This document shows, piece after piece, positions 1-45,121 of a DNA stretch of 64,000 nt (positions are counted from its first letter, which is position 1; each line of letters begins with the position of its first letter). Location: the NCBI RefSeq assembly GCF_036588685.1, contig NC_086382.1, positions 32,736,001 to 32,800,000 of the forward strand. The letters run 5' to 3'. Made by a program: the position numbers and the translations under genes. The DNA comes from Mytilus trossulus (lineage: Eukaryota). The notes beneath the pieces were generated by a model. That model worked only from the letters and a program-made list of their open reading frames with translations, was not told where the DNA came from and made no database searches.

Positions 1-335
1 CTGGTTAGAGGTATAGGGGGAGGGTTGAGATCTCACAAACATGTTTAACCCCGCCGCATTTTTGCGCCTGTCCCAAGTCAGGAGCCTCTGGCCTTTGTTA
101 GTCTTGTATTATTTAAATTTTAGTTTCTTGTGTACAATTTGGAAATTAGTATGGCGTTCATTATCACTGAACTAGTATATATTTGTTTAGGGGCCAGCTG
201 AAGGACGCCTCCGGGTGCGGGAATTTCTCGCTACATTGAAGACCTGTTGGTGACCTTCTGCTGTTGTGTTTTTTTTTTTATTTTGGTCGGGTTGTTGTCT
301 CTTTGACACATTCCCCATTTCCATTCTCAATTTTA
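1..335 (+). repeat. Naiad pseudo-LTR (upstream copy, truncated by window start)
   Basis: Near-identical to 4020-4354; ends in ...ccattctcaatttta. Confidence 0.92.
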
Positions 336-701
336 TTTTTTACAGAGTTTGTCTTTAGTGCCGTGTGGAGGCAGTAGAGTGCCTCCCCGTGCTTCAGGTT
401 TATGCTCTTATAATATACTAGATTATGGAGTGTGTGTCCGAGCGAGAACTGCTCTAGTTCATTACTTTAGGAATGTTTATCAAAAAGTAGTATTTCAATA
501 TTCAGCCCCATTCTACTAATTGGTCAGCCATCAGTCATACCCTGATATACACTATCTTTTTCGGGTAATTAATACTGATAGCGTTCGACATTTTCAGCTA
601 ACAAATTTATCACTTTTACTTAACTTAATTATTGTATGCTGGTTCATATTCTGGACGCCAATCTTTGCTCCTTTATTATGTAATTCACTAACAAAACAAT
701 T

Positions 702-3700
702 ATGAAACTAAGAAACGGAAAAATACTAAATACTAAACTTGTTCAAAGGGTATCTACACGTCTCAATTTTCAAAATCGGTTATCTAAAAATACTACCATC
801 GCTAACATTTTTAACAATAAAAATCGTGGTTACCCTTCTATCGATAAGTGTCATGCCAAAAAATGACTTACATGTCCCCGTCTTTCCACCAACAATACGG
901 TAAGGTCCACGTTTAATGGTCGCACATTTTCTTTAAATTTTGAAACTGATATTACTTGAAAAACAAACAGTATTATTTATTTACTCACATGAAACAAACC
1001 GGGATGTGGTATTCAGTACGTAGGAGAAACTGGAAGATATTTATCAAAACGCACTCAAGAACATCTGTATCGTTTTAAAAGACCTAATAAATTCAAAAGT
1101 ATCATTTACCAACACCTTAAGAAGCACAACCATCCTTTTAAATATTAAGCAGTTCAACCTTTAGAAGTAGTAAATAAGCAGCCTGGTGAATCGCATTCAA
1201 AGTTTGTACGATCACGGAAAATAATTGAATTAAATTGGATTAAAAAATTACAGACAGTTTACCCTCTCGGTCTAAATGATAATATCATGGGAACTGGTAA
1301 TATATCTAGAACCAATTCCGTTAACATTTTGGATATTGTTTCTAAAACTGTTCGTAAAAACCGTTCTCACGGTTGTAGAACAAATCGCAATCAAAGAAAA
1401 TTTCGGGCCAATCATACCAATATTTCGGACTTAATTTCTATTTCAAAAAACAACGGCAGACATTATCTGTTAACAAAACTCTGTTCGTTACCGGTTAATA
1501 AGTTAAATAAAATTTTGGAGGATTGCAACACAATTTCATATAGCAGTCCTAAGTATGAAATTGTTCAAATTATTATGGCATATTGTTATTCTAAATTATT
1601 TCCCAAAATTGATCGCCCTGAAGATCATAAAAAACATTTTATTAAAATTAAGTATGTCAATAAAGGCTTTGATTTTGTAAATATTGCCGGTATATTTAAC
1701 GACCATTCTGTTAAAGAACAAATTCCTGGATATTTTGACAATACTGAGCTACCTCTTATTTGTTATATTTACAAGAAATCTACCCGGAAATTTGTGTTTA
1801 ATTATAGTCAATTGTGTAAAGATGTTAATATCAGTGAAAATACACCTACTTCATGTAATTGCAGTAATTCCGAATATATTTATGGACCCATTTCCCATGT
1901 TATAACAGGAGATCTTAACATCGTTCAAGACCGAGAGTTAAAATCATTTCTCAGTAAAGGACCTAAATATCGTCCCCCGTCAATTATTAATTGGAATGAG
2001 TGTCGTAATATCATCCACGACTCACTCCATACTTACTGTATGAAATGGATAAAACGGGAAAAAGCTGACAAAAAATCTTTGGACTCTTTTTTTAATTCAG
2101 TAATGAAGATAGTTGATATACGTATTCAACATTTTAAAGAACATTTTACTATTAACAATAACCACAATAAACCTATTTCTCGTATCAAACATAAACTAAA
2201 AGAACTAGCCAAGGAATTTGTTTTTGTCCCGGCCGATAAAGCTGCTAATAATATTATTATTGTTTGACGTAAATTTTACATCGAGGTTCTGAAAAAGGAA
2301 ATCACCAATTCACCAACATTCCAACTGACTCCATTTTCAGAAAACGAAATCTGTAACAAACATAAACTTTTAGCCACCGCTTTACAAGCAGAGCCAAATA
2401 CAATGAAAGTTCCAATTATGTATTGGCTTCCGAAGCTACACAAAACCCCTTACAAATATAGATTTATTTCGTCTTCAAGCCATTGTTCAACTACTAAATT
2501 GTCTATTATTCTTACCAGCACACTTGGTACAATTAAAAACCTTATAATAAATTGTTCAAATAAGGCCTTCGAAAATAGTGGAATAAATTACTTTTGGAGT
2601 GTCAAGAACTCGTTGGAAGTACTTGATAAATTGCATGCTTATATTGGTGATTTTGAATCTGTTCAAAGTTTTGATTTTTCTACCCTGTATACCACATTGC
2701 CTCACATTCTCATTAAGAAAAAATTCACACACCTAATTAAATGGGCATTCAAAAAATCAGAATGTGAATATATATGTTCAAACTCTTTTAGGTCATTTTT
2801 TAGTAGCAATAAACAAAAAAACTATGTTAATTGGACATGCTTTGATACTATATATGCCCTTGAATTTTTACTAGATAACATTTTTGTTCGCTTTGGGGAT
2901 TCCGTATATCGTCAGATTATCGGAATTCCAATGGGGACTAACTGTGCACCACTTATTGCGGACCTCTTTTTGTATTGTTACGAGTTACAATTTATGACAA
3001 AAATAAGCAAAGACCCATCAAAACAACATCTGATAAACAAATTTAATAATACTTTTAGATATTTGGATGATATTTTGGCTCTCAATAATGACGACTTTAG
3101 TATGTGTATTAATGAAATTTATCCTGGTGAACTCACTTTAAATAAAGCTAATACTAACAATGACCACTGCCCTTTCCTCGATCTTGATATCTATATCACT
3201 AACGGAAAGCTGAATACTAAAATTTATGATAAAAGGGATGATTTTTCATTTCCTATCGTTAATTATCCGTTTTTAGATGGTGACGTTCCCTTGTCACCAT
3301 CTTACGGTGTTTATATATCTCAACTTGTACGATTCGCTCGTGTATGTAACAATGTTTTAGATTTTAACGAGAGAAATTTATGTATTACTGAAAAATTATT
3401 ACCCAGGGTTTTCGATATCACAAACTAGTCAAAACATTTACTAAATTTTATCATCGGTATAAAGACATCATTCGTAAATATAGCTCAACATGCAGACTTT
3501 TTATACGTTCAGGTATTTCACATCCAATTTTTTATGGAAATATTCTTTATAAAGCACAAAGGTGTCAGTATTCACCTCATAAACTTACAAAACCTTTGAA
3601 TAGACTTATTAAGAAGGGATATAATTACGATACTGTTGTCAAGTCATTAAAGATTGCATATTTTGGCGTTAATATTGAGTCACTGATAAGGTCTTTGCGT

Positions 3701-3709
3701 CGGAACTAA
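702..3709 (+). pseudogene. Naiad EN-RT polyprotein ORF (~1000 codons), predicted selenoprotein; disrupted in this copy
   Basis: ATG 702, ORF 1287-2267 and ORF 2403-3428 are all in the same frame. In-frame TGAs at 864, 957, 990 and 2265 fall at Cys-motif positions. Disruptions are a TAA at 1146-1148 and an inferred 1-bp deletion near 3402, after which the frame continues QGFRYHKLVKTF...SLRRN to TAA 3707-3709. The C-terminus matches the second copy's ORF at 40702-40920. Confidence 0.88.
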
Positions 3710-3760
3710 ACACATTTATTCTAAAAACAGTTGTTGGCATGACACGGGTTATGTTCTTCT

Positions 3761-3828
3761 CATATATGTTATGATGGTATGATACTAAACCCCTTACGGG
3801 AAGGATTGTGCCTGATGTTCATATGATG
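3761..3828 (+). promoter_or_regulatory. SECIS element (type II-like) in the Naiad 3' UTR
   Basis: AUGAU (3771-3775) and UGAU (3813-3816) form the non-Watson-Crick core. Helix II is GGUAUGAU/AUUGUGCC. Unpaired AAA at 3787-3789 starts after an 11-nt spacer from the core. Apical mini-stem CCC/GGG. Helix I is CAUAUAUG/CAUAUG(A)UG. Confidence 0.85.
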
Positions 3829-4019
3829 AAATCATAATCTTTCAGTCAGTTTAATTGAAGTCTGGAGCTGGCATGTCAGTTAACTGCTAGTAGTCTGTTG
3901 TTATTTATGTATTATTGTCATTTTGTTTATTTTCTTTGGTTACATCTTCTGACATCAGACTCGGACTTCTCTTGAACTGAATTTTAATGTGCGTATTGTT
4001 ATGCTTTTACTTTTCTACA

Positions 4020-4354
4020 CTGGTTAGAGGTATAGGGGGAGGGTTGAGATCTCACAAACATGTTTAACCCCGCCGCATTTTTGCGCCTGTCCCAAGTCAG
4101 GAGCCTCTGGCCTTTGTTAGTCTTGTATTATTAAAATTTTAGTTTCTTGTGTACAATTTGGAAATTAGTATGGCGTTCATTATCACTGAACTAGTATATA
4201 TTTGTTTAGGGGCCAGCTGAAGGACGCCTCCGGGTGCGGGAATTTCTCGCTACATTGAAGACCTGTTGGTGACCTTCTGCTGTTGTGTTTTTTTTTTTAT
4301 TTTGGTCGGGTTGTTGTCTCTTTGACACATTCCCCATTTCCATTCTCAATTTTA
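4020..4354 (+). repeat. Naiad pseudo-LTR / 3' end (downstream copy)
   Basis: Near-identical to 1-335 and to the reverse complement of 40064-40390. Confidence 0.92.
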
Positions 4355-5045
4355 CTATTATAAACAAAGAAAATATAATAATGTTACAAAATAATTAGGT
4401 ACCAGCGTTTGCTATTGAGTATTTAGATTCCATTTAAAATTAGTTTGAAGTTAAGTGAAATAAGGGATACGCCTTTCATTAGGAAAATGTGTATTATCAT
4501 AATTAACTATGTCCAAAAGTGCCTGTTTAAAATAGATTTTAACACGCCAAGAAGTTTACCTTACAATAAATATATATTTAAATTCTAGAAATACAATGTT
4601 CAGATCCGTGCCAAAGTTGCTTTTCATAAATTGTTTGTTAAAAAAAAAAACCAAACCGGGTGATATATATAGACGAAACCGGGTGATTGTTTAGTAACAA
4701 CATTGACGAAACCGGTTTATTTTGATTTGACATAACCCTTTTCTTTCGTTCCATACACAGAGATACAATTAATGAGATGCTCATAATAACTTAATTTGCA
4801 ATCTCCGTGTCAATATCTATCTTCCCGTACCTTTCTTTCCGTACAATGTGAACAATTTAACGAGAAATTAAACAATTTCGAGGCAAGTTTCACTCAATTC
4901 GTCTTTTTGACATGCATTTTGACTTATTTCTCCGTTAATAGAGAACGGTTGTAGAAAATATTGCATCTCCCAATAGAAAATAGTTGTATATGTATATATA
5001 TTCTTCGATATCATAAAAAGAATAAAAAAATAAGGAGAAACCTAC

Positions 5046-36470: not shown

Positions 36471-38771
36471 GTCGTATTTTTTAGGATATTATTTGTTATG
36501 AAAGTATTCCATTAAGCTTTGCATAAACCGACCGTGCGAGGGCTGAAAAGCCAGTCAAGGTCGTTAAACACTTCCATATATAAGCTTTGCATAGTTTACA
36601 CGTAATTTGAATAACACAGATTATTGGACACATGGTCTGTAATTATAGGTCGAACTCACTTTACATATTAAAGAAGACGTTATATGATTTTTTTTCAATA
36701 AAGAAACAAAAATAAACATTTTAGCTAGATCAAGATTGCGTCTCAAATCCATCCCAACTTTTTTTGGAGAAAAAAAAAGGAAGACTAAAAAACATTTTCC
36801 TCTCCCCTATTACCTCTGGTTTTACCATACATATAATACTACAACTTGAAAAGTATGAGTTCTTTTTTTGTTGAATCACTAAAATTTTATCGGAGATCGA
36901 TTTTGCAAATCCCCGGATCATATAAGACATGCGTATCAAACATATTTGTGATATCTTTAATTATTTTATTCTTAATTGGAGTTGAAAAAAAAATGAAATC
37001 CCATGCTGGCAGTTTGAGGAAAACCCTCCTAAGAATTAATGTGTCAGGATGATAGGATATGTATTAGTCTTATAGGAAGCGTTTCGTACAATTTTGTCGG
37101 TTTGTTTTGGACAAATAATCCTGCGCTTGTCATCATTACTGATTTTAAATGAGGGGTGCATGACATGTGCGCCAATTTTGAAATAAACACCTTTTTTTCA
37201 ATTGCGCCGAAACAAAGTTTAATGTTATACAAGTGGTGAGACTTTAATAAAATATTGAATCTGAATCTTTGTGCCAATTATTATTTTTTCATTAGCGCAA
37301 ATTTAATTTGACCACATAAGATATGATACATTGTAGACAATTACCGTTAAAACTCACAATTAAACCATGGAAGTAATATTTAAATATTACTTCCATGGTT
37401 AAACTCAGCCCGATGTTATAATAGGCAACAGAAGAAACTTCGCAAAAAGTCAATTATTAACATTAATTAACAAAGGATCACTACCAATAAACTGGACCCC
37501 TGTTGTGTTCACTTATCGCTACACTTCGGTTTGGAAATTTAGATGGAATACGGCGGTTACTGATATGTCAGCTCAAGATTTTAATTAGACTGATTGAAAG
37601 ATTATGTCTTCATATTAAAATCATGGAAGTATTATACTGACTTCCATGTAAAACAAATAACCACAATTCCTCCCAGTAGGTGTTTAGAACCATGCCGTCA
37701 TAAACTTATCCATCTCGAAATCTCACTTCGACCACCCAGTGGTAGGGGAAGGGGCAAATGACAGACGGAAGCGTTATTTTTGTTATTCTATCAATGAATT
37801 GTGTACAACCTGTAAATTGACACAATTTTTTTTTCTTAAGTTGTGCAAGTGAAAATTTAAATAATAAAAACTGGCGCGATTGAAGTGCAGATTGGCATAA
37901 ATGAAAAACACCGGTTAAAATTTAAAATGGTAACTAAAAGCAGAGACATAGTATACATGTCTCTGCAAAACGTTTGGATTTACGATATGAATTACTTTTA
38001 AGATGGGACTATATTTGTAGACAACGAACAGGTTATGAAATACTCATATGGCAATTAAAACTCTTTTTTTAGGTTACATGAATGTTTATTTGTGGATTAT
38101 GTAAATACTTTGAGAAGTCAGAAATATTTATTAATACTGTGCTATTTTATTTGTCCGGTGAAATGTCCCGTTTTTATGATTCATAATTAAGCATAGATCT
38201 ATTTCATCTCTTTCCTTCAATTCCTTTTTTGATAGTTATCGTTAAATTTCTATATTTATTCATTCTTTTACTTGTGTTGCTTCAGTTTACACTCAGGAGT
38301 TTGAAATTCGAGAGAAGCTCTACTGTGATAGTCGAGTTTGGTATATTTTTACCCCGTTATTGATAGGATTTCAAACTCCTGTGGTTTACATTATTTCACT
38401 AATCACAGAATTTTAAATAGATCAGTTCTTGGTTCTATGTTTATGGAAGCATAAACCTTTTTTTACTTTCATTTTAAATGTAGTTAAAAGATGCAACCTT
38501 TGCAGAAGACCAATAGTTCCTTTTTATAATTGATAAAGTAAACGCGGACCGAGAAGAAGACACCCACTGACTTTTCTGTTTGAAACAATATTAAACATAA
38601 ACATAAACAAGAAACGTAATTTAATTATAATAATCGTTCATAGTTTCCTACAGCACTTCATCAATCGCAAGTCATATCATGAATATTATTTATGACGGCT
38701 CATGAATATTATTGAAGGCTGGCCTCATGAATATTAACGCTAACTGTTATCGACGGCTAGCTTCACACTAG

Positions 38772-39730: not shown

Positions 39731-40063
39731 ATGGGTTAAGTGTAAAGCGTCAGAAATAATAAGAGAAAAACACGACCTTGTACAATGCCAAGATACAGGT
39801 ATCGACATGGATCAATGGATGTGTATATGTATAGATCTTTTATGATATTTATTTTGCTTTTACTTTACTGATAACAAACTCCGTTATGTTTTGTTATTAT
39901 AATTTTGACTTTTTTTCCTGTGTACGGACGCTATAAAAAAGGACATATCATGAATAAAAAATTAATTCATGAACTCAAATTCCCTATATCTGTGATATCG
40001 GATTGATAATCTGTTATCTCGATCGGATTGATAATCCGTTATCTCTAACTTGCAATCGGTTAA

Positions 40064-40908
40064 TAAAATTGAGAATGGAAATGGGGAATGTGTCAAAGAG
40101 ACAACAACCCGACCATAGAAAAAAACAACAGCAGAAGGTCACCAACAGGTCTTCAATGTAGCGAGAAATTCCCGCACCCGGAGGCCTCCTTTAGCTGGCC
40201 CCTAAACAAATATATACTAGTTCAGTGATAATGAACGCCATACTAATTTCCAAATTGTACACAAGAAACTAGAATTAAAATAATACAAGACTAACAAAGG
40301 CCAGAGGCTCCTGACTTGGGACAGGCGCAAAAATGCGGCGGGGTTAAACATGTTTGTGAGATCTCAACCCTCCCCCTATACCTCTAGCCAATGTAGAAAA
40401 GTAAACGCATAACAATACGCACATTAAAATTCAGTTCAAGAGAAGTCCGAGTCTGATGTCAGAATATGTAACCAAAGAAAATAAACAAAATGACAATAAT
40501 ACATAAATAACAACAGACTACTAGCAGTTAACTGACATGTCAGCTCCAGACTTCAATTAAACTGACTGAAAGATTATGATTTCATCATATGTACACCAGG
40601 CACAATCCTTCCCGTTAGGGGTTAAGTATCATACCATCATAACATATATGAGAAGAACATAACCCGTGTCATGCCAACAACTGTTTTTTTAATAAATGTG
40701 TTTAGTTCCGATGCAAAGACCCTATAAGTGAATCAATATTAACGCCAAAATATGCAATCTTTAATGACCTGACAACAGTATCGTAACTATATCCCTTCTT
40801 AATAAGTCTATTCAAAGGTTTTGTTAGTTTCTGAGGTGAATACTGACACCTTTGTGCTTTATAAGAATATTTCCATAAAAAATTGGATGTGAAATACCTG
40901 AACGTATA
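40064..40908 (-). mobile_element. Second Naiad copy: ORF C-terminus, 3' UTR and pseudo-LTR
   Basis: Reverse complement of ~3503-4354; encodes ...YKAQRCQYSPQKLTKPLNRLIKKGY...SLHRN*. Confidence 0.93.
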
Positions 40909-42312
40909 GACGTTAAGCACGATATTGCGTCTGAAATGGTAACGTCAAATTTTTACGTTTTACGGCGATTACCGATTATTTGGGATAAGTTTTGTATTTC
41001 GCTTGCAATTTTTGTTTTGCACATCAATATGGATACTTCTTATAATGTTTTGTTGTACTGAATATGCATGGAATATTTCCCTATGAAAGTAATGTAACGT
41101 AAGCAACAAACAACAAAATATATCGTATTTGGGTAATGCATAAGCTATATGAAATGCGAAGATTATACGGTATGATGAGTGTCAATGAGACAAACATGAC
41201 AACTCTCTACCAGAGATCAATTGACATAAAGCGTAATAAAGTGCAATGTGTTCCCATTTAGATGTGAAAAGGAGGAGGTTATGTATATGGCTTTAATATA
41301 AAAAGTTTGTCGGGAATTACAAGTTAAACGGGTCTTGCTTATAAAATGCACTATACTTTCTTTAATAGCGGTACAATTAGATTATGAAATGAAACGATTG
41401 TCAGAAAAAAAAGGTTAATTATAATTCATCTCATATGTTTACAAGCTTTGTATGATGTGGAGAGGTATATAGCCACGCTTAAGGCCCAATTTGTTTTTCA
41501 CTTTCAATTCTATACACATGAATCTTATAGTCAGTTTACGCTTCCCAAATTTGAAAATTTGATAAAGATGATTTGTTATCCTAACTTTTTCACAACTTAA
41601 GAACCTCATCTAAACGAACAAACCCAGTTATCGGATTTTTTTTTAATACTTTGTGGTCTTGTTGATAGTATCTGACTATCAAGAAAATTCTATCTGAGGA
41701 ACTATCATATACAGATGATCCACCATAAATAGCGTACCCCGAATTGACAACGTTGAAAACGTACGAAAATCGTCCAGTGGACAATTGAGTCAAACTTTCA
41801 AGACATTTCATTTCTTTGAAAACGAAGTCGTTTTGACTACGCAAGTTATCAAAAAGTATGTAGCTGTTTTGTAAAGTTAAAGCACAATTACGGAAAAGCA
41901 CTATTTAGAATGCAACTAATCTAAATTTTCAATAAATTACGTCGCAAATGACAATTTATTTGTTAAAAACGGCGTAATTCGACATTGGACATCTTGCAAG
42001 ACATTTGCCAGAAGCCGTTGCATTTTTTTATGTAGTGTGTGTGCTGCAAAAATTCGATTTTGATATGGTCTATGTATGCACTTATGTGAGACGAATTTAC
42101 ACAAACGAAATATTATACAATCTTATATTTTAAAACCTATAAATTTTGAAAACTTAACATCTTCCAAAATCTGACCATAATGAACACTATTTGTTTTTGC
42201 CAAAAAAATAGCATTGGTCGTTACAGGAACGCATATGCAGTAATATTGTTATACTTTATATATAAAGCATATCATTCATTCGAATTTTCGTTTTTTTTTC
42301 GTTTCGAATTTT

Positions 42313-42768
42313 TCCCCAAAGCGAACAAAAATGTTATCTAGTAAAAATTCAAGGGCATATATAGTATCAAAGCATGTCTAATTAACATAGTTTTTTTGTT
42401 TATTGCTACTAAAAAATGACCTAAAAGAGTTTGAACATATATATTCACATTCTGACTTTTTAAATGCCGATTTAATTAGGTGTGTGAATTTTTTCTTTAT
42501 GAGAATGTGAGGCAATGTGGTATACAGGGTAGAATAATCAAAACTTTGAACAGATTCAAAATCACCAATATAAGCATGCAATTTATCAAGTACTTCCAAC
42601 GAGTTCTTGACACTCCAAAAATAATTAATTCCACTATTTTCGAAGGCCTTATTTGAACAATTTATTATCAGGTTTTTAATTGTACCAAGTGTGCTGGTAA
42701 GAAGAATAGACAATTTAGTAGTGGAGCAATGGCTTGAAGACGAAATAAATCTATATTTGTAAGGTGTT
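42313..42768 (-). mobile_element. Naiad RT fragment, collinear with 40064-40908
   Basis: Reverse complement of ~2446-2900, with a TGG->TAG stop at 42370-42372; ORF 42378-42713 matches the RT. Confidence 0.92.
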
Positions 42769-44286: not shown

Positions 44287-44920
44287 TATAAAAAAAAAGA
44301 AGATGTGGTATGATTGCCAATGAGACAACTGTCCACAAGAGACCAAAATGTCACAGACATTAACAACTATAGGTCACCGTACGACCTTCAACAATGAGCA
44401 AAGCCTATACCGCACAGTCACGGAGCTATAAAAGTCCCCGATATGACAATGTAAAACAATTCAAACAAGAAAACTAATGGCCTTATCTATATAAAAAAAA
44501 AGAACAATAAACAAATATGTAACACATAAACAAACGACAACCACTGAATTGCAGGCTCCTGACTTGGGACAGGCACATACACAAATAATGTGGCGGGGTT
44601 AAACATGTTAGCGGGATCCCATTCCTCCCGCTTACCTTGGACAGTGGTATAACAGTACAACATAAGAACGAACTATAAAAATCAGTTGAAAAAGGCTTAA
44701 CTCATCAGATGGACAAAAATACAAGTGGACGTGGCCAGGTACTTGTACATCCCGACAACAAAAAGACAATAGGAACAGATCTGAGAGTATTCGCAGTTAT
44801 CTGACAGCTAGTTCAAAGCCACTAACAACTAATACAAAAAATCATGCATCTAAGACTAAACAATCAATCCGTACACATCCAACATCCAATGGATTTAGTG
44901 TAAAGACGTCATAAACAGTC
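44287..44920 (-). mobile_element. Least degraded copy of the Naiad-related non-autonomous repeat
   Basis: Reverse-similar to 9717-10157; contains aggctcctgacttgggacaggc and ggcggggttaaacatgt, shared with the Naiad pseudo-LTR. Confidence 0.82.
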
Positions 44921-45121
44921 AGGTTAATATTATTCCGTATCATATCTTTGTGACGTCAAATACGTTGACCCGGCCTTAATAACTTTGACCCGGACTTATC
45001 AGCGACGTCATAATGTTTGAACCGACGTTAATAACTTTGACCCGAACTTATCAAGTCATCTTTTGAGTGCTGGTGAAACAAAGAAAACACTTCCGAAACA
45101 CACAAATATAGCCCGATAAAT

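What the first reader, a model, noticed from the sequence alone, without database searches (positions are those of the whole stretch)
702..3828. Retrotransposon that appears to recode UGA as selenocysteine: four in-frame TGAs at cysteine positions plus a canonical SECIS
Seen in sequence: the ORF track splits this element, but ATG 702 to the RT is one frame. The four TGA codons read C-H-A-K-K-[TGA 864]-L-T-C, D-I-T-[TGA 957]-K-T-N-S-I-I-Y-L-L-T-[TGA 990]-N-K-P-G-C-G-I-Q-Y-V-G-E-T and D-K-A-A-N-N-I-I-I-V-[TGA 2265]-R-K-F-Y. Each sits where this kind of PLE normally has Cys: three in the metal-binding region around the GIY-YIG motif and one at the start of the RT region. About 50 nt after the true stop is a SECIS hairpin with the correct core, spacing and apical AA. 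Established: Naiad PLEs encoding multi-Sec selenoproteins have been reported in clams and spiders. Inference: this is such a family in a mussel-like host, so its transposition would depend on host selenium and Sec machinery, and premature termination at UGA could throttle it. This copy is dead (TAA 1146, frameshift ~3402). I cannot tell from the sequence whether this particular family has been described.
Basis: partly seen in the sequence, partly recalled or inferred. Interest (0 to 1): 0.92.

Follow-up and report, generated by a model that had tools for sequence, protein, structure and literature searches.

The report
Selenocysteine-coding Naiad retrotransposon, dead copy
This is a broken copy of a very young, roughly thousand-copy Naiad-type Penelope-like retrotransposon whose endonuclease/reverse-transcriptase gene carries four UGA codons at invariant cysteine positions and its own SECIS hairpin, so it is almost certainly translated as a multi-selenocysteine protein; that kind of element was first described in clams and spiders in 2021, and here it turns up in a new host and as part of a large, old clade.

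Summary
Window 702-3709 is one reading frame with TGA at 864, 957, 990 and 2265. A SECIS lies 51 nt after the TAA stop. The TAA at 1146 and a one-base loss near 3402 are private to this copy.

All four TGAs are fixed in 30/30 genomic copies. Each aligns to a column that is 100% Cys in up to 32 full-length Naiad-like proteins.

A sister family from another source (dS 0.30) keeps all four TGAs, with dN/dS 0.10, including 0.08-0.10 downstream of them. Deeper relatives keep the same sites at dN/dS 0.07-0.12.

A SECIS follows the stop in every relative with enough 3' sequence. Twelve of its 17 base pairs show compensatory changes. The genome has two tRNA-Sec genes.

This is a Naiad Penelope-like element that encodes a selenoprotein, as published for two clams and two spiders (Craig et al. 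2021, PMC8557442).

New here:
- a different, mussel-like host;
- a UGA combination not reported in that paper;
- a second family in the same genome with five UGAs;
- a clade in which Sec and Cys alternate at five fixed cysteine sites (2-6 UGAs per lineage).

Sec insertion itself is inferred, not shown. The scan has flagged other copies of this family elsewhere in this genome.

The parts
1..335 (+). Tail of an upstream, 5'-truncated tandem copy (pseudo-LTR arrangement typical of Penelope-like elements); it continues upstream of the window
   Evidence: 1-335 is 99.7% identical to 4020-4354. In L001 the upstream copy reaches back to at least the equivalent of 3222. Most other copies have the same head-to-tail partial copy, of variable length.
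336..701 (+). 5' leader of the full-length unit
   Evidence: Copies without an upstream partial copy begin at about 316-336. There is an in-frame TAA at 681 before ATG 702.
702..3709 (+). Single EN-RT open reading frame (1002 codons in unbroken copies): N-terminal Cx4UxxC finger, GIY-YIG endonuclease with CCHH, KR-rich linker, CxC, GPKY, DKA, reverse transcriptase
   Evidence: Translation. The copy keeps 64 of 71 columns that are at least 90% conserved in 32 homologues; 3 more are the TGAs. The homologues carry an N-terminal Pfam GIY-YIG domain. 25 of 29 other copies are open over 1002 codons with exactly four TGAs.
864..866 (+). TGA 1 (S1): second Cys of the Cx4CxxC zinc-finger-like motif
   Evidence: Fixed in 30/30 copies. 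The column is Cys in 26/26 homologues. It is also TGA in family B, L051 and L057, and Cys in other lineages.
957..959 (+). TGA 2 (S2): Cys just before the GIY motif
   Evidence: Fixed in 30/30 copies. The column is Cys in 29/29 homologues. It is TGA in 14 of 18 related loci that cover it.
990..992 (+). TGA 3 (S3): first Cys of the CCHH motif, between GIY and YIG
   Evidence: Fixed in 30/30 copies. The column is Cys in 29/29 homologues. It is TGA in 17 of 18 related loci.
1146..1148 (+). TAA, a lesion private to this copy
   Evidence: Present in 1 of 30 copies; the other 29 have a sense codon. The column is a variable hydrophobic residue in homologues.
1854..1862 (+). CxC motif (Cys-Asn-Cys); its first Cys (S4) is TGA in family B and in several diverged lineages but TGT here
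   Evidence: Both Cys are invariant in 32 homologues.
2235..2267 (+). DKA motif followed, eight residues on, by TGA 4 (S5) at 2265-2267
   Evidence: Fixed in 30/30 copies. The column is Cys in 32/32 homologues. It is TGA in 23 of 24 related loci. Proteins P0121, P0122, P0123 and P0127 end exactly here.
3400..3404 (+). Private one-base length change that shifts the frame
   Evidence: Present in 1 of 30 copies. The frames are shown.
3707..3709 (+). TAA, the true stop of the ORF
   Evidence: It is TAA in 29 of 30 copies.
3761..3825 (+). SECIS element (form 2, with apical mini-stem): AUGA 3771-3774, AAA 3787-3789, UGAU 3813-3816
   Evidence: Rfam SECIS_1 at 32.8 bits, E 2e-4. Syntenic SECIS hits occur in 13 related loci. 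12 of 17 pairs are compensatory, 91.7% of cells are paired, and 0/500 shuffles do as well. The family model R1 scores it 67.9 bits.
3826..4354 (+). Rest of the 3' region up to the constant 3' end (...CTCAATTTTA); it holds a weak twister-like core at 4074-4102
   Evidence: The 3' end is the same in all 30 copies and the flanks differ after it. 3826-4019 is 95.9% identical to the sister family, the best-kept non-coding stretch. The twister-P1 match is partial, at 13.3 bits and E 7.

Best explanation
Window 336-4354 is a dead copy of a very young, high-copy Naiad-type Penelope-like retrotransposon, preceded by the tail of a partial tandem copy. The family's single mRNA encodes a 1002-codon GIY-YIG endonuclease / reverse-transcriptase.

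Four cysteines in that protein are written as UGA:
- the second Cys of the Cx4CxxC finger;
- the Cys before GIY;
- the first Cys of CCHH;
- the Cys eight residues after DKA.

A single form-2 SECIS sits in the 3' UTR, 51 nt past the UAA. It recruits the host's selenocysteine machinery (SBP2, eEFSec, tRNA-Sec), so all four UGAs are read as Sec and the full-length protein is made. That protein then copies the RNA into new sites by target-primed reverse transcription.

Shown here: the anatomy, fixation of the UGAs, their Cys homology, purifying selection on the ORF downstream of the UGAs, a covarying SECIS, and host tRNA-Sec genes. Inferred: actual Sec insertion, and any benefit or selenium dependence.
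For: 1. The UGAs are fixed in 30/30 copies and the two lesions are private. 25 of 29 other copies are open over 1002 codons with exactly four TGAs.

2. The four sites are 100% Cys in full-length homologues, and 64 of 71 conserved columns are otherwise kept.

3. A sister family that is absent from this genome (best own-genome match 93%) keeps all four TGAs at dS 0.30 and dN 0.031. The ratio is 0.10 overall, 0.096 between TGA 1 and TGA 4, and 0.080 in the RT after the last TGA. Independent pairs in a second subclade give 0.07-0.12 at dS 0.9 to above 2.

4. The DKA+8 site is TGA in 23/24 related loci, S3 in 17/18 and S2 in 14/18.

5. SECIS_1 hits lie just 3' of the stop in 13 related loci, and in family B. 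The covariation is strong: 12 of 17 pairs are compensatory, and 91.7% of cells are paired against 35-49% when the partner is slid. A model built from ten of these SECIS finds further ones it was not trained on, in L067, L062, L048 and L061.

6. The genome has two tRNA-Sec genes with anticodon TCA, at 79.6 and 77 bits.

7. The best own-genome matches to the closest relative that has Cys at DKA+8 (P0003) are this TGA family itself, so no closer Cys-coded helper is present.

8. The published precedent has the same site logic (PMC8557442).
Against: - There is no direct evidence of Sec insertion or of expression.
- The Rfam SECIS score (32.8) is below the gathering score of 35. The lone hairpin does not fold better than shuffles (z -1.0).
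- Between this family and its sister family, the SECIS is no better conserved (90.8%) than the neighbouring UTR (89-96%).
- One SECIS serving four UGAs up to 2.9 kb away requires processive decoding. Such decoding is known mainly from selenoprotein P.
Confidence: 0.88

Rival explanations
1. The UGA-bearing family is non-autonomous. Translation stops at the first UGA, and copies are made in trans by the protein of a Cys-coded Naiad in the same genome.
For: Penelope-like and LINE-like elements can be mobilised in trans. The genome holds a very large number of related elements (48,240 first-look candidates). Close relatives with Cys at DKA+8 exist elsewhere (P0002, P0003 and P0004).
Against: dN/dS is 0.08-0.10 downstream of the UGAs over dS 0.30, and 0.07-0.12 over dS above 2, with the UGAs retained. 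All four stops are TGA and all fall on invariant Cys columns. The SECIS covaries and co-occurs with the UGAs. The best own-genome matches to the Cys-type relative are this family itself, at 80%.
Confidence: 0.04
2. The UGAs are read through without selenium. A near-cognate tRNA or the Sec machinery inserts Cys, Trp or Arg, and the hairpin is a general read-through or RNA-stability element rather than a true SECIS.
For: The SECIS score is below Rfam's curated threshold. One relative has TGG (Trp) at DKA+8 (P0050). Cys can be inserted at UGA by the Sec machinery when selenium is scarce; this comes from established knowledge and was not tested here.
Against: The AUGA, AAA and GA core nucleotides are invariant across ten diverged lineages while the helices covary. 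That is the SECIS signature, not that of a generic hairpin. The recoded sites are only Cys, as expected for Sec/Cys exchange. The host has tRNA-Sec.
Confidence: 0.06
3. Chance or assembly artefact: a decayed pseudogene whose stops happen to fall on Cys codons.
For: This particular copy is indeed dead.
Against: The same four TGAs occur in 30/30 copies. They also occur in independent metagenome contigs (L043-L047) and in diverged families. The chance of four random stops all hitting invariant Cys columns, about 8 of 1000 columns, is of the order of 1e-9.
Confidence: 0.01

Closest known systems
Naiad_Mmer and Naiad_Scon, the selenoprotein-encoding Naiad PLEs of the clams Mercenaria mercenaria and Sinonovacula constricta (Craig et al. 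2021, PMC8557442)
   Same: Both have an N-terminal GIY-YIG plus a C-terminal RT. Both have UGA at the Cys before GIY-YIG, at the first Cys of CCHH and at DKA+8, and a SECIS just after the stop.
   Different: This family adds a UGA at the second Cys of the Cx4CxxC finger, which was reported only for a spider family. It lacks the RT6(D) UGA of Naiad_Scon. Its SECIS lies 51 nt after the stop, rather than 1-21 nt after it or overlapping it. The host has 14 chromosome-scale contigs, which does not fit either clam; the clam karyotypes come from my own knowledge and were not tested.
Naiad_Sdum and Naiad_Smim, the spider selenoprotein Naiads (same paper)
   Same: They are multi-Sec, with UGA in the CX2-5CxxC finger, before GIY-YIG and at DKA+8. 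Naiad_Sdum also has four UGAs.
   Different: The spiders recode the first Cys of that finger, or the first and second, and not the CCHH Cys. The paper infers an independent origin for them.
Family B of the same genome (L047 type, five UGAs)
   Same: Same architecture, same four UGA sites, its own SECIS, and many near-identical open copies in G000.
   Different: It is only about 58% identical in the linker region. It has a fifth UGA at the first Cys of the CxC motif. Its SECIS lies about 136 nt after the stop.
Selenoprotein P (SelenoP)
   Same: One mRNA with several UGAs decoded processively as Sec; bivalve SelenoP is extremely Sec-rich (cited in PMC8557442).
   Different: It is a host transport protein with two SECIS elements, and its Sec residues are mostly in a C-terminal tail. 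Here there is one SECIS, and the Sec residues are at metal-ligand-like Cys positions of an enzyme.
Ordinary Cys-coded Naiads (for example P0131, P0133, P0140)
   Same: Same domain order and the same motifs: GIY-YIG, CCHH, CxC, GxKF/Y, DKA and RT.
   Different: They have TGT or TGC at all these sites. In the RT tree they lie outside the 26-row clade that holds every UGA lineage.

Membership tests
Naiad clade of Penelope-like elements | GIY-YIG endonuclease positioned N-terminal to the RT | tested here: met
   GIY (IIYLLT) and YIG (QYVGET) lie at 972-1031 and the RT motifs at 2400-3300 of one frame. The catalytic Y, G, R, H, E and N columns are kept. Aligned homologues score Pfam GIY-YIG at their N-termini: P0140 at 32.6 bits and P0131 at 22.7, against a cut-off of 22.6. 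The window's own pieces are too short between TGAs to score.
Naiad clade of Penelope-like elements | CCHH and upstream CX2-5CxxC zinc-finger-like motifs in the EN | tested here: met
   The finger reads C-HAKK-U-LT-C and the CCHH reads U(990)...C(1005)...H...H, with UGA standing for two of the Cys.
Naiad clade of Penelope-like elements | Linker with KR-rich stretch, CxC motif and GxKF/Y motif | tested here: met
   RKNRSHGCRTNRNQRK, SCNCS (1854-1862) and KGPKYR are all present. Both CxC cysteines are invariant in 32 homologues.
Naiad clade of Penelope-like elements | Pseudo-LTR / partial tandem copies and frequent 5' truncation | tested here: met
   The upstream partial copy is joined head-to-tail at 335|336. 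Most of the 30 copies show the same arrangement, and several are 5'-truncated.
Naiad clade of Penelope-like elements | No canonical hammerhead ribozyme | tested here: met
   There is no hammerhead hit in 3400-4400 at E up to 10, and none in the whole window at gathering score. A weak twister-like core is seen instead.
Naiad clade of Penelope-like elements | RT with insertion-in-fingers domain; phylogenetic placement with published Naiads | not tested
The PDB sequence search gave no TERT hit.
Eukaryotic selenoprotein gene | In-frame UGA at a position that is Cys in homologues | tested here: met
   All four sites are 100% Cys in homologues.
Eukaryotic selenoprotein gene | SECIS element in the 3' UTR | tested here: inconclusive
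   The match to SECIS_1 is full length, with the AUGA/AAA/GA core, but scores 32.8 bits against a gathering score of 35. Support comes from syntenic hits in 14 related lineages and from covariation. SECISearch3 was not available.
Eukaryotic selenoprotein gene | Coding constraint continues downstream of the UGA | tested here: met
   dN/dS is 0.096 for 867-2264 and 0.080 for 2268-3401 against the sister family. It is 0.07-0.12 in deeper pairs.
Eukaryotic selenoprotein gene | Host has the Sec decoding machinery | tested here: met
   Two tRNA-Sec (TCA) genes were found by Rfam RF01852 (79.6 and 77 bits) and confirmed by ARAGORN. The protein factors were not searched.
Eukaryotic selenoprotein gene | Selenium actually incorporated at the UGA | not testable with these tools
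   This needs 75Se labelling, mass spectrometry or a reporter assay.

The most novel reading that the evidence does not exclude
Sec-coding Naiads are not rare oddities. They form an old, species-rich clade in which Sec and Cys toggle at five fixed ligand-like cysteines (2-6 UGAs per lineage).

In this mussel-like genome they are by far the largest selenoprotein 'gene family'. They scatter about a thousand functional SECIS elements through the genome on 5'-truncated copies. That would make transposition selenium-gated. It would also provide a ready source of SECIS for new host selenoproteins, as Craig et al. speculated.
Probability: 0.25. Interest if true: 0.8.

Novelty: new member of a known kind. 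Interest (0 to 1): 0.5.

Why it matters
Selenoprotein-encoding transposons were reported only once, as four consensus families. This locus shows that the phenomenon extends to another bivalve lineage at very high and recent copy number.

The comparison it allowed supplies evidence that was still thin:
- strong purifying selection downstream of the UGAs;
- a covariation-supported SECIS;
- one clade that holds every UGA lineage, with Sec/Cys exchange at five defined cysteines.

It also has a practical consequence. Gene and repeat annotators split these elements at every UGA, so such families are systematically mis-annotated in molluscan genomes. In addition, about a thousand dispersed SECIS copies are a plausible raw material for new host selenoproteins.

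Tried and rejected
I therefore could not fetch DNA for the closest relatives with Cys at DKA+8 (P0002, P0003, P0004). Their endonuclease (EN) sites and SECIS status remain unknown.
There is no RNA evidence and no organism label, and read laying was not used.
- Pfam on the window's own pieces gave nothing significant: RVT_1 at E 0.23 and no GIY-YIG, because the EN is cut into 10-51 aa pieces by the TGAs.
- The PDB sequence search of the RT piece gave no relevant hit.
- The paper's supplementary consensus sequences are not held, so there is no direct alignment to Naiad_Mmer or Naiad_Scon.
- A search for the accession prefix of the 99%-identical metagenome contig found no paper.
- Cluster look-ups gave no organism names.
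- Folding the single SECIS sequence is not better than shuffles (z -1.0). This was rejected as a test, and covariation was used instead.
- Short-range conservation of the SECIS against the sister family does not discriminate.
- The excess of synonymous changes among variants shared within the genome (9 S: 8 N, against 26 S: 50 N for singletons) goes in the expected direction, but the numbers are too small to count.
Per-site tallies across copies were used instead.
Full report
**What is in the sequence**

Translating window 702-3710 in one frame gives a continuous endonuclease / reverse-transcriptase protein. It is interrupted only by TGA at 864, 957, 990 and 2265 and by TAA at 1146. Near 3402 the frame shifts by one base and then runs on to TAA 3707-3709. 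ATG 702 follows an in-frame TAA at 681.

Rfam's SECIS_1 model matches 3761-3825 on the + strand over its full length, at 32.8 bits (gathering score 35) and E 2e-4. The AUGA core is at 3771-3774, the apical AAA at 3787-3789 and the 3' UGAU at 3813-3816. The SECIS starts 51 nt after the stop.

**Extent of the element**

The repeat unit is larger than the reported span. Window 1-335 is a 99.7% copy of 4020-4354. Comparison of 30 genomic copies shows a constant 3' end at 4354 (...CTCAATTTTA), after which the flanks differ. It also shows a variable-length, 5'-truncated upstream copy joined head-to-tail at 335|336. This is the pseudo-LTR / partial-tandem layout described for Penelope-like elements.

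The unit is therefore about 336-4354 (4.0 kb): a 366-nt leader, a 1002-codon ORF and a 645-nt 3' region.

**Are the TGAs fixed and the lesions private?**

A DNA search of the window's own genome returned 40 scored matches at 99-100% identity out of 4,043 first-look candidates. I did not build a consensus. I tallied states column by column over 30 copies.
- All four TGAs are present in 30/30 copies.
- The TAA at 1146 and the length change near 3402 occur in this copy alone.
- 25 of the other 29 copies are open over 1002 codons with exactly four TGAs.
- Mean pairwise divergence is 0.35%.
- The 131-nt stop-to-SECIS stretch has 1,057 first-look candidates, with at least 40 perfect matches on one contig.

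This is a very young burst of roughly a thousand copies, and the window copy is a dead member of it.

**Cysteine homology**

An exhaustive HMMER search with the linker piece found full-length (850-1100 aa) relatives. I aligned 32 of them and added the window protein with X at each stop. The four TGA columns are Cys in 26/26, 29/29, 29/29 and 32/32 homologues that cover them. The TAA column is a variable hydrophobic residue.

The window protein matches 64 of 71 columns that are at least 90% conserved. These include the GIY-YIG catalytic Y, G, R, H, E and N and the RT aspartates. Three further columns are the TGAs.

The homologues score Pfam GIY-YIG at their N-termini. The sites are the second Cys of Cx4CxxC (S1), the Cys before GIY (S2), the first Cys of CCHH (S3) and the Cys eight residues after DKA (S5). 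Craig et al. 2021 name S2 and S5 in all four of their families, S3 in the clams and S1 in a spider (PMC8557442).

**Is the ORF translated through the UGAs?**

A scan of metagenome contigs with an alignment of linker pieces gave 30 related loci at 37-99% identity.

Two of them (L044, L045) are a sister family. It is not in this genome, where the best match is 93% and is this family itself. Against that sister family, all four TGAs are kept and no other stop appears. Overall dS is 0.30, dN is 0.031 and dN/dS is 0.10.

| Segment | dN/dS |
|---|---|
| 702-863 | 0.05 |
| 867-2264 | 0.096 |
| 2268-3401 | 0.080 |
| 3404-3706 | 0.36 |

Selection has therefore acted on codons lying behind one, three and four UGAs since the two families split. 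Independent pairs in a second subclade give dN/dS of 0.07-0.12 at dS from 0.9 to above 2, again with shared TGAs.

This argues strongly against the idea that the family is a non-autonomous passenger terminated at the first UGA. In addition, the best own-genome matches to the closest relative with Cys at DKA+8 (P0003) are this TGA family itself.

**A mosaic of Sec and Cys across the clade**

Across the related loci, DKA+8 is TGA in 23 of 24, S3 in 17 of 18 and S2 in 14 of 18. S1 is TGA only in this family, family B, L051 and L057. Several protein-database entries end exactly at DKA+8 (P0121, P0122, P0123, P0127).

A fifth recurrent site (S4) is the first Cys of the CxC motif. It is TGT here but TGA in family B and in at least six other lineages. 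Lineages carry from 2 to 6 UGAs.

Family B (L047 type, 1001 codons, five UGAs) is present in this same genome at 100% identity. Four of the six copies inspected have open reading frames.

In a maximum-likelihood tree of the RT region, every UGA lineage falls in one clade of 26 rows (SH-aLRT 100). Six Cys rows and one Trp row are nested inside that clade. The 23 remaining Cys-coded Naiad-like proteins lie outside it. This was a quick search and the root is not inferred, so gains cannot be told from reversals.

**The SECIS**

SECIS_1 hits of 26-32 bits, all below the gathering score, lie on the coding strand just 3' of the stop in 13 related loci. There is also one 136 nt after the stop in family B. 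In the second subclade the SECIS begins at the stop codon itself, as reported for Naiad_Mmer.

An alignment of ten distinct SECIS sequences has invariant ATGA, AAA and GAT. Twelve of 17 predicted pairs show compensatory double changes, and 91.7% of cells are paired against 35-49% when the partner is slid by 1-3 columns. None of 500 shuffles reaches the observed values.

A covariance model built from these ten finds untrained examples after the stops of L067, L062, L048 and L061. It also finds one in an older relic in the window at 40584-40652 on the minus strand.

Two weaknesses remain. The lone hairpin does not fold better than shuffles (z -1.0). At the short distance to the sister family, the SECIS is no better conserved than the UTR around it.

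**Host side**

The genome has two tRNA-Sec genes with anticodon TCA, found by Rfam at 79.6 and 77 bits and confirmed by ARAGORN. Matches lie on 14 contigs with coordinates up to 50-110 Mb, plus small scaffolds, in a 1.30-Gb assembly.

This fits a 14-chromosome bivalve such as a mytilid mussel, and does not fit either of the two clams in the paper. That is inference from my own knowledge of karyotypes. No tool gave an organism name.

**Verdict**

The locus is a dead copy of a Naiad retrotransposon family that encodes a four-selenocysteine protein and has its own SECIS. The kind is already published. What is new is the host lineage, the S1+S2+S3+S5 combination, a co-resident five-UGA family, and evidence that Sec-coding Naiads form a diverse, long-lived clade under purifying selection.

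Sec insertion itself, expression, and the proposed selenium dependence or throttling of transposition are not shown.

**Earlier notes of this scan**

Earlier notes flagged other copies of the same families elsewhere in this genome, and one follow-up reached the same reading. I tested their five-UGA claim and it holds.

Noticed in passing
window 4074-4102 (and its copy at about 55-83): The element's tail holds a GCC-UGUCCCAAG-UCAGG stretch that gives a weak, partial match to the core of the type-P1 twister ribozyme (13.3 bits, E 7). Earlier notes of this scan report a permuted twister fold in Naiad tails of this genome. I did not establish it here.
   Followed up: partly
window 3826-4019: This is the best-conserved non-coding stretch between this family and its sister family. 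It is 95.9% identical, against 89-91% for the SECIS and pre-SECIS UTR and 81-82% for the leader and the far tail. Its function is unknown.
   Followed up: no
L047 (family B); G000 copies L074-L078: A second Sec-coding Naiad family lives in the same genome. It has five UGAs, the extra one at the first Cys of the CxC motif. Its SECIS is at L047 3620-3677, about 136 nt after the stop. It has many near-identical copies with open frames.
   Followed up: yes
L051, L052, L062 (metagenome contigs): There are extra in-frame TGAs beyond the five recurrent sites: L051 at aa 637 of its open frame (KIT-U-HRLPTMYW) and L052 at aa 854. L062 ends ...R-U-stop, with a TGA directly before the TAG and a SECIS 10 nt later. 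They may be copy-specific mutations or further Sec sites.
   Followed up: no
window 40061-42768, minus strand: This is an older, rearranged relic of the same family (96-97% identical fragments of the RT and tail). It still has a recognisable SECIS at 40584-40652 (54.5 bits with model R1). Weaker SECIS-like hits lie at 44852-44922 (22.5 bits) and 37648-37713 (17.1 bits), both on the minus strand, with no adjacent RT remains of this family.
   Followed up: partly
G000 contig C10, about 63.84-63.86 Mb and 64.46-64.49 Mb (L081): There are long tandem arrays with an 891-900-bp period whose units match the tRNA-Sec model just below threshold (45.9 bits). In the sampled unit ARAGORN calls a tRNA-Cys (GCA) and, 891 bp upstream, a tRNA-Ser (GCT). 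These look like amplified tRNA gene arrays.
   Followed up: no
P0050 (protein database): One relative inside the UGA clade has Trp (presumably TGG) at DKA+8, where the others have Sec or Cys. It may be a decayed copy.
   Followed up: no
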